A stretch of DNA of 64,000 nt from Octopus bimaculoides (Eukaryota): NCBI RefSeq assembly GCF_001194135.2, contig NC_069003.1, positions 432,061 through 496,060 on the forward strand. Reading direction: 5' to 3'. The position numbers and the translations under genes are program-made. This document shows positions 20,778-20,840 of the stretch, one piece after another; position 1 is the stretch's first letter, and the number at the start of each line of letters is the position of its first letter. Below the pieces are notes generated by a model, which searched no databases, had not been told where the DNA came from, and was given only the letters and a program-made list of their open reading frames with translations.

Positions 20778-20840
20778 CTTCCGCCAAATAAGAAACATTT
20801 AAAACTCCAACTTACCTGGAAAAGAAGAGAAAAATTTATT
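20778..20840 (-). promoter_or_regulatory. Candidate recursive splice site 1 (3'ss|5'ss junction at 20816/20815) with 38-nt RS-exon 20815-20778
   Basis: Minus strand reads AAATTTTTCTCTTCTTTTCCAG|GTAAGTTGGAGTTTTAAATGTTTCTTATTTGGCGGAAG|GTAAGAT; upstream AG-free zone of roughly 60 nt. Confidence 0.7.

What the first reader, a model, noticed from the sequence alone, without database searches (positions are those of the whole stretch)
20778..20840. RS site 1: 38-nt frameshifting RS-exon with competing donors
The exon GTAAGTTGGAGTTTTAAATGTTTCTTATTTGGCGGAAG begins with a perfect donor and ends at AAG|GTAAGAT. Its length is not a multiple of 3 and two of three frames contain TAA. Inclusion would therefore act as a poison exon, as reported for many RS-exons (inference).
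Basis: partly seen in the sequence, partly recalled or inferred. Interest (0 to 1): 0.75.

Follow-up and report, generated by a model that had tools for sequence, protein, structure and literature searches.

The report
Candidate recursive splice site, octopus intron
On the minus strand, a very strong intron-end signal sits directly against a perfect intron-start signal, followed 38 bases later by a second intron-start signal. This is the layout of the fly "ratchet points" that let very long introns be removed in pieces, here in what looks like an octopod genome, and no RNA data were available to show that the site is used.

Summary
On the minus strand the sequence reads (AAT)n, a 17-nt pyrimidine tract, CAG|GTAAGT, a 38-nt segment, then AAG|GTAAGA. 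The junctions fall at 20816/20815 and 20778/20777. The segment has TAA in two frames and its length is not a multiple of 3.

It is not a chance match. A 24-nt pattern (15 pyrimidines + CAGGTAAGT) matches only here and at 54921-54944, also on the minus strand, even with 3 mismatches allowed (0.11 expected). The two sites share a 28-nt core and nothing else. Neither lies in a repeat family. Both show fly ratchet-point features: TT at -5/-6, TAAY branch-point motifs at -24 to -36, long AG-free zones, and a downstream donor at +38 or +45. They lie 34 kb apart in 64 kb with no detectable coding exon.

A SINE-like repeat places the window in an octopod cephalopod.

Best reading (about 0.6): two fly-type recursive splice sites with cryptic RS-exons in a ≥64-kb intron of an unidentified minus-strand gene. 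The host gene, transcription, RNA junctions and cross-species conservation could not be tested. The "poison exon" claim holds only if the intron interrupts coding sequence. The held literature has no report of recursive splicing in molluscs.

The parts
20835..20870 (-). AAT-rich stretch (ATTAATAATAATAATGATAATAATAATAATAATAAA) at -20 to -55 from the acceptor. It offers repeated TAAT branch-point-like motifs with candidate branch A at -24, -27, -30, -33 and -36. This is inferred, not mapped.
   Evidence: Fly ratchet-point branch points lie at -21 to -36 (10.1101/006163). Of 24 (AAT)n loci in the window, only this one is followed by a pyrimidine tract.
20818..20834 (-). Uninterrupted 17-nt pyrimidine tract TTTTTCTCTTCTTTTCC, with TT at -5/-6.
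   Evidence: TT at -5/-6 is present in 99.5% of fly ratchet points (10.1101/006163).
20816..20817 (-). Acceptor AG of the candidate recursive 3' splice site. The AG-free zone upstream is 59 nt, the 95th percentile for the window.
20810..20815 (-). GTAAGT directly abutting the AG. This would be the reconstituted recursive 5' splice site (ratchet-point donor).
   Evidence: 9/9 match to MAG|GTRAGT; only two such sites on this strand in 64 kb.
20778..20815 (-). 38-nt candidate cryptic RS-exon GTAAGTTGGAGTTTTAAATGTTTCTTATTTGGCGGAAG. Its length is not a multiple of 3 and it has TAA in two frames. It contains an ATG (20798-20796) that stays open to the exon end.
   Evidence: direct reading of the sequence.
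20772..20777 (-). Downstream donor AAG|GTAAGA (8/9 to consensus). It would define the RS-exon and compete with the ratchet-point donor.
   Evidence: one of only seven 8/9 sites on this strand; P=0.009 of such a site at +25 to +80; U1 duplex -9.5 kcal/mol.
54929..54965 (-). Second site, upstream part: AAT-rich stretch with TAAT/TAAC (candidate branch A at -25, -28, -34), then the 16-nt pyrimidine tract TTTTTCTCTCTTTTCC with TT at -5/-6.
   Evidence: AG-free zone 124 nt.
54921..54928 (-). Second site, core AG|GTAAGT (AG 54928-54927, GTAAGT 54926-54921). In the transcript it would lie 34.1 kb 5' of the finding.
54876..54926 (-). Second site: 45-nt candidate RS-exon (54926-54882) with stops in two frames, then the donor CAG|GTAAAC (54881-54876, 7/9 to consensus).
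   Evidence: P=0.11 for a ≥7/9 donor at +25 to +80; U1 duplex -9.6 kcal/mol.

Best explanation
The finding is one of two Drosophila-type intronic recursive splice sites (ratchet points) in a very long intron (≥64 kb) of an unidentified gene. The gene would be transcribed from the minus strand of an octopod cephalopod genome.

Proposed mechanism, with each step marked:
1. Shown in sequence, use inferred: as transcription passes 20.8 kb, the AAT-rich branch region, the 17-nt pyrimidine tract and CAG are recognised as a 3' splice site. The AAG|GTAAGA donor 38 nt downstream helps by exon definition.
2. Inferred: the upstream exon, or the RNA already re-spliced at the 54.9-kb site, is joined to position 20815. 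This releases a lariat of about 34 kb.
3. Inferred: the join recreates a 5' splice site, xxx|GTAAGT. This site normally outcompetes the +38 donor, so the 38 nt and the rest of the intron are removed in the next step and nothing is left in the mRNA.
4. Inferred: if the +38 donor is used instead, a 38-nt segment is included. It shifts the frame, or in a 5' UTR it adds an upstream ATG.
For: - Motif and statistics. There are two perfect 24-nt matches on the same strand and none at 1-3 mismatches (0.01 to 0.11 expected).
- Fly ratchet-point hallmarks are present at both sites: TT at -5/-6, a prominent pyrimidine tract, and TAAY at -24 to -36 (compared with 10.1101/006163).
- A donor lies at +38 or +45 from each site. 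This matches the short (~50 nt), generally out-of-frame cryptic RS-exons of flies (PMC8605326) and the enrichment of 5' splice sites after recursive sites (PMC6110457).
- The 34.1-kb spacing lies within the fly segment range of 2.6-63.6 kb (10.1101/006163).
- No coding exon was detected on either strand in 64 kb: Pfam on all filtered ORFs of 30 aa or more and a splice-flanked ORF scan. This is consistent with one long intron.
- The two sites share only a 28-nt core, 27/28 identical. The flanks are unrelated (P=0.28 and 0.53), and neither site is in a repeat family. Whether the sites arose independently or by an old duplication, only the functional core has been kept.
Against: - There is no evidence that the region is transcribed, or from which strand. 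Poly(A)-signal counts, base skews and CpG content show no strand asymmetry.
- The host gene is not identifiable.
- Cross-species conservation, the strongest sequence-only criterion in flies, could not be tested.
- The held literature has no report of recursive splicing in any mollusc, so the prior for this clade is unknown.
- 11% of the window is assembly gaps, which could hide exons.
- The near-identity of the two pyrimidine tracts exceeds what a generic consensus requires, so common descent of a short element is not fully excluded.
Confidence: 0.6

Rival explanations
1. The sites are sequence coincidences, or relics, in DNA that is untranscribed or transcribed from the plus strand. They are never used for splicing.
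For: No transcription, gene or strand evidence could be obtained. There is no strand asymmetry in poly(A) signals or base skews. The window is 20% microsatellite, with many CT-rich and AAT-rich tracts that supply raw material for acceptor-like sequences.
Against: The chance expectation for two such sites is 0.01 to 0.11, with none at 1-3 mismatches. Both are on the same strand. Each is followed by a donor at +38 or +45 (joint probability about 0.001). Both have TT at -5/-6 and long AG-free zones. Only 1 of 24 (AAT)n loci is followed by a pyrimidine tract.
Confidence: 0.15
2. The 38-nt and 45-nt segments are genuine alternatively included micro-exons that happen to begin with GTAAGT. They would be expressed RS-exons like Ubx mI/mII, or regulated NMD-coupled poison exons, rather than always-skipped cryptic exons.
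For: The +38 donor is strong: 8/9 to consensus, with a U1 duplex of -9.5 kcal/mol, comparable to the ratchet-point donor unless the upstream exon ends in AG. Flies have a small set of expressed RS-exons, and donor strength alone does not always decide the outcome (PMC8605326).
Against: Both segments have stops in two of three frames, and the 38-nt one shifts the frame. They show no coding-like content. In flies, intronic ratchet points outnumber expressed RS-exons by more than 10 to 1 (PMC8605326). Nothing here distinguishes regulated inclusion from error.
Confidence: 0.12
3. Both sites are copies of a short mobile or duplicated element (about 30-60 nt, linked to an (AAT)n tail) that happens to carry TTTTCCAGGTAAGTTG. 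The motif is inherited, not selected.
For: The cores are 27/28 identical, which is more than a generic pyrimidine-tract consensus requires. Both are preceded by AAT-rich sequence, and a tRNA-like SINE in the window carries an (AAT)n tail in the same orientation.
Against: There is no similarity beyond the core on either side. There is no third copy in 64 kb, whereas real repeat families here have 3-7 copies. The SINE with the (AAT)n tail is not followed by this motif, and sequence 5' of the AAT stretch is not SINE-like. Two 5'-truncated copies ending at exactly the same base is unlikely.
Confidence: 0.08
4. The juxtaposed sites bind U2AF and U1 but serve another purpose, for example U1-dependent suppression of premature cleavage and polyadenylation in a long intron, or a splicing decoy. 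No recursive splicing takes place.
For: A perfect U1 site placed every few tens of kb in a long AT-rich intron with many AATAAA (62 on the minus strand) would suit such a role. This is inference only.
Against: A U1-only role does not explain the strong acceptor, TT at -5/-6, the AG-free zone, or the second donor at +38 or +45.
Confidence: 0.05

Closest known systems
Drosophila intronic ratchet points with cryptic RS-exons (Ubx, kuz, Bx, luna and others; Hatton 1998, Burnette 2005, Duff 2015, Joseph 2018/2021, Pai 2018)
   Same: Pyrimidine tract + CAG|GTAAGT with TT at -5/-6. Branch-point motifs at about -25 to -35. A short out-of-frame cryptic exon closed by a second donor. More than one site per very long intron, tens of kb apart. 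No trace expected in the mRNA.
   Different: The source is a mollusc (octopod), not an insect. Use, conservation, host gene and constitutive skipping are all untested here. The branch region is an (AAT)n microsatellite. The two cores are nearly identical to each other.
Vertebrate recursive splice sites / RS-exons in long neuronal genes (Sibley 2015; Blazquez 2018, PMC6224609)
   Same: An RS-exon is defined first, and splicing then creates a recursive 5' splice site that competes with the RS-exon donor. Inclusion can introduce premature stop codons.
   Different: Only nine fully suppressed intronic sites were noted definitively in mammals, against more than 500 in flies (PMC8605326). The extended fly-like consensus seen here is closer to the insect type.
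Expressed RS micro-exons (Ubx mI/mII, 51 nt, beginning GTAAGA)
   Same: A short exon that starts with a donor consensus, so it can be either kept or re-spliced out.
   Different: Ubx micro-exons are in frame, coding and ultraconserved. The 38-nt segment shifts the frame and has stops in two frames.
NMD-coupled poison cassette exons
   Same: Inclusion of an out-of-frame or stop-containing exon would give an unproductive mRNA.
   Different: Poison exons are regulated, their inclusion is observed, and they are usually highly conserved throughout. Here inclusion is hypothetical, and the effect depends on whether the intron lies in coding sequence.

Membership tests
Fly-type intronic ratchet point with cryptic RS-exon | [quoted passage not shown] | tested here: met
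   CAG|GTAAGT at 20818-20810 (minus strand)
Fly-type intronic ratchet point with cryptic RS-exon | Prominent pyrimidine tract with TT at -5/-6 (99.5% of fly sites) | tested here: met
   17 uninterrupted pyrimidines with TT at -5/-6; criterion from 10.1101/006163
Fly-type intronic ratchet point with cryptic RS-exon | Branch point about 21-36 nt upstream of the acceptor | tested here: inconclusive
   TAAT motifs at -24 to -36 and a 59-nt AG-free zone. These are predictions only; no lariat data.
Fly-type intronic ratchet point with cryptic RS-exon | Downstream 5' splice site defining a short (~50 nt) cryptic exon | tested here: met
   AAG|GTAAGA at +38, 8/9 to consensus, P=0.009 by position; criterion from PMC8605326 and PMC6110457
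Fly-type intronic ratchet point with cryptic RS-exon | Ratchet-point donor stronger than the RS-exon donor | tested here: inconclusive
   U1 duplex -9.5 kcal/mol for the RS-exon donor, against -13.4 to -5.4 for the ratchet-point donor depending on the unknown upstream exon end
Fly-type intronic ratchet point with cryptic RS-exon | Cryptic exon content out of frame or stop-containing | tested here: met
   38 nt, TAA in two frames
Fly-type intronic ratchet point with cryptic RS-exon | Lies on the sense strand of a very long intron (more than about 11 kb, typically more than 40 kb) | tested here: inconclusive
   64 kb without a detectable exon on either strand, but gene, strand and transcription are unknown
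Fly-type intronic ratchet point with cryptic RS-exon | One to six sites per intron, segments 2.6-63.6 kb | tested here: met
   Second site at 54926, 34.1 kb away including about 4.6 kb of assembly gaps
Fly-type intronic ratchet point with cryptic RS-exon | Core motif conserved across species while flanks are not | not testable with these tools
   No cephalopod genome could be searched. ORF-based and DNA-pattern attempts found nothing. The only indirect hint is that the two sites share the core alone.
Fly-type intronic ratchet point with cryptic RS-exon | RNA evidence: exon-to-site junction reads, sawtooth read density, recursive lariats | not testable with these tools
   No RNA-seq access
NMD-coupled poison exon | Located within coding sequence, so that inclusion creates a premature stop | not testable with these tools
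   Host gene and reading frame are unknown. The frameshift and stop content of the segment itself is confirmed.
NMD-coupled poison exon | Inclusion isoform actually produced, and stabilised when NMD is blocked | not testable with these tools
   No transcript data

The most novel reading that the evidence does not exclude
Fly-type zero-nucleotide ratchet points with cryptic RS-exons operate in cephalopod molluscs. They would use the same extended consensus as insects (T-rich tract, TT at -5/-6, CAG|GTAAGT), with an (AAT)n microsatellite serving as a redundant branch-point array. This would place this style of recursive splicing in the third great bilaterian clade. It would point either to an ancestral bilaterian mechanism or to convergent recruitment wherever long, probably neural, introns evolve.
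Probability: 0.5. Interest if true: 0.65.

Novelty: new member of a known kind. Interest (0 to 1): 0.5.

Why it matters
Recursive splicing has been documented experimentally in flies and vertebrates. The two groups differ in how common always-skipped intronic sites are. The held library has no paper linking recursive splicing to octopus, and only incidental co-mentions for cephalopods or molluscs.

Cephalopods have large genomes with very long introns. If their introns carry fly-like ratchet points, this would:
1. extend the mechanism to Lophotrochozoa;
2. give a simple sequence rule for finding such sites across cephalopod genomes;
3. flag positions where a single-base change in GTAAGT would be predicted to cause inclusion of a frameshifting 38-nt segment.

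If the sites are not used, the case still shows how far a motif argument can go without RNA data.

Tried and rejected
- Host gene and exons: Pfam scans of all filtered stop-to-stop ORFs of 50 aa or more and of 30-49 aa on both strands found nothing. A scan for splice-flanked open segments gave no convincing exon.
- Exact look-up of 10 window ORFs in the protein collection: none present.
- Homology search with a degenerate LINE reverse-transcriptase fragment (51207-51590, minus strand): no hit.
- Homology search with all ORFs within about 500 nt of both sites, hoping to reach orthologous loci in other assemblies: no hit.
- The one protein-like ORF next to the site (20427-20684, plus strand) gave a single borderline hit, 22% identity to bacterial DUF1601 repeats. 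I rejected it as chance.
- A metagenome scan for the 27-nt core found 0 matches.
- Rfam and tRNA scans found nothing.
- Strand of transcription from composition: AATAAA/ATTAAA counts, donor-like and acceptor-like motif counts, AT and GC skews, and CpG observed/expected show no asymmetry and no CpG island.
- Segmental duplication or transposable-element origin: rejected for now, because only a 28-nt core is shared.
- Special RNA structure at the sites: none, z = -0.44 and +0.42.
- (AAT)n followed by a pyrimidine tract as a generic microsatellite flank: rejected, 1 of 24 loci.

Full report
**What is in the sequence**

The feature lies on the minus strand. Read 5' to 3' it is:
- an AAT-rich stretch, 20870-20835;
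- an uninterrupted 17-nt pyrimidine tract, TTTTTCTCTTCTTTTCC, 20834-20818;
- AG, 20817-20816;
- directly abutting it, GTAAGT, 20815-20810.

Thirty-eight nucleotides after the AG comes AAG|GTAAGA, with the donor at 20777-20772. The stated junction coordinates are correct. One extra detail: the segment contains an ATG (20798-20796) that stays open to its 3' end.

**Is it more than chance?**

Yes.
- YYYYNCAGGTAAGT occurs twice, against 0.07 expected.
- A 24-nt pattern, 15 pyrimidines plus CAGGTAAGT, matches only at 20810-20833 and 54921-54944. Both are on the minus strand. This holds with 2 mismatches allowed (0.01 expected) and with 3 (0.11 expected). There are two perfect sites and no near-misses on either strand. 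That is not what the tail of a random distribution looks like.
- The minus strand has 26 strong acceptor-like sites and 12 GTAAGT, and two coincide. The plus strand has 18 and 12, and none coincide.
- In 64 kb the minus strand has only two 9/9 matches to MAG|GTRAGT, and they are these two sites. Of only seven 8/9 matches, one is the +38 donor of the finding.
- A random position has such a donor at +25 to +80 with probability 0.009.
- The second site has CAG|GTAAAC at +45 (7/9, P=0.11). This closes a 45-nt segment that also has stops in two frames.

**Are the two sites copies of something?**

With microsatellites masked, the only significant similarity between the two 4-kb neighbourhoods is a 28-nt core, ATTTTTCTCT(T/-)CTTTTCCAGGTAAGTTG, 27/28 identical. 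Sequence downstream of the core and upstream of the AAT-rich stretch is no more similar than shuffled controls (P=0.28 and 0.53). Neither site belongs to any of the repeat families that recur within the window. Among 24 (AAT)n loci, only the one at the finding is followed by a pyrimidine tract.

So this is neither a recent duplication nor a transposable-element copy. Whether the sites arose independently or by an old duplication, only the functional core has been retained. That argues for constraint.

**Comparison with the defining features of fly ratchet points**

Duff et al. (10.1101/006163) report the following for fly sites:
- an unusually strong pyrimidine tract;
- TT at -5/-6 in 99.5% of sites;
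- branch points at -21 to -36;
- host introns of 11-133 kb;
- one to six sites per intron;
- segments of 2.6-63.6 kb.

Joseph et al. (PMC8605326) add that each ratchet point carries a short (~50 nt) cryptic RS-exon closed by a downstream donor. [quoted passage not shown] The ratchet-point donor normally outcompetes the downstream donor. Pai et al. (PMC6110457) find recursive sites in most fly introns longer than 40 kb, and enrichment of strong donors after recursive sites.

Both sites here have the following:
- TT at -5/-6;
- TAAT or TAAC at -24 to -36;
- AG-free zones of 59 and 124 nt, against a window median of 8 and a 95th percentile of 59;
- a downstream donor at +38 or +45;
- out-of-frame or stop-containing content.

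The spacing between the two sites is 34.1 kb, of which about 4.6 kb is assembly gap.

Donor competition cannot be settled. The predicted U1 duplex is -9.5 kcal/mol for the +38 donor. For the reconstituted donor it is -13.4, -10.6, -9.1 or -5.4 kcal/mol if the upstream exon ends in CAG, AAG, TTG or TTT.

**Context**

The window is a gapped eukaryotic draft scaffold with 24 N runs (11% of bases), about 35% GC, and about 20% microsatellite after masking. Rfam and tRNA scans are empty.

A repeat present three times in the window translates to a peptide that matches a hypothetical protein of Argonauta hians at 77% identity (E = 2e-10) and a short ENA metagenome contig at 82%. It also matches my own recollection of an abundant Octopus SINE-like repeat. 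That recollection is a lead, not a test. I therefore place the window in an octopod cephalopod. The species is not determined.

No coding exon was found on either strand. This fits one very long intron but equally fits intergenic DNA. Composition gives no clue to the transcribed strand.

**What could not be done**

All routes to the host gene, to orthologous loci and to RNA evidence failed or do not exist in this tool set. Conservation and junction reads are the two criteria that define ratchet points experimentally, and both remain untested.

**Verdict**

The best explanation (about 0.6) is a pair of fly-type recursive splice sites with cryptic RS-exons in a ≥64-kb intron of a minus-strand gene. 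The finding is the downstream one of the two.

The recursive-site anatomy and the competing donors are well supported by sequence. The "poison exon" claim holds only if the intron interrupts coding sequence. By analogy with flies, inclusion would more likely be an error state than a regulated outcome.

Rivals:
- an unused chance or relic motif (0.15);
- genuinely included micro-exons or poison exons (0.12);
- a short inherited element (0.08);
- a U1/U2AF-binding site with another role (0.05).

The held literature contains no report of recursive splicing in octopus and only incidental co-mentions for cephalopods or molluscs. If confirmed, this would be a new member of a known kind in a new clade. 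That is interesting but not surprising to a specialist, since the mechanism is known in both flies and vertebrates.

Noticed in passing
window 6531-6895, 14954-15117, 24879-25134: Three copies of a SINE-like repeat. Its translation matches a hypothetical protein of Argonauta hians and an ENA metagenome contig. This is the basis for placing the window in an octopod.
   Followed up: partly
window ~39130-39260 (minus strand); also 39004-39075 / 40794-40866: A tRNA-like SINE end (GGTTAAGAGCGTGGGCTACTAACCCCAAGATTCCAAGTTCGATTCC...) with an (AAT)n tail. ARAGORN does not call it a tRNA. Nearby there is a 73-nt inverted pair at 84% identity.
   Followed up: no
window 21234-21438, 22497-22587, 22767-22903, 22973-23169, 30690-30865, 41103-41320, 52578-52671: A second interspersed repeat family, about 100-220 nt at 67-80% identity and in both orientations. 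Its nearest copy begins about 400 nt from the finding.
   Followed up: no
window 51207-51590 (minus strand); 47038-47133 / 51209-51304: A degenerate LINE reverse-transcriptase fragment (motifs NSRPISL... and DVIYLDYS) interrupted by stops. It is adjacent to a 96-nt repeat found twice at 90% identity. Neither the homology search nor Pfam found a hit.
   Followed up: partly
window 27015, 27148, 27853 (plus strand): Three perfect AG|GTAAGT donor-like motifs within 850 nt on the plus strand, none preceded by a pyrimidine tract. They lie in or near SINE-like sequence and are probably repeat-derived.
   Followed up: partly
window 45784-45851 / 45852-45919: A perfect 68-nt tandem duplication (100% identity). 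It could be a real duplication or an assembly artefact.
   Followed up: no
window 20427-20684 (plus strand): An 86-aa open frame with protein-like composition about 100 nt from the finding. Its only database hit is a borderline match to bacterial DUF1601 repeats (22% identity), judged to be chance.
   Followed up: yes
whole window: About 20% of the sequence is microsatellite ((CA)n, (GA)n, (AAT)n, (TA)n and others) and 11% is N gaps in 24 runs. Distances such as the 34.1 kb between the two sites therefore include estimated gap sizes.
   Followed up: yes
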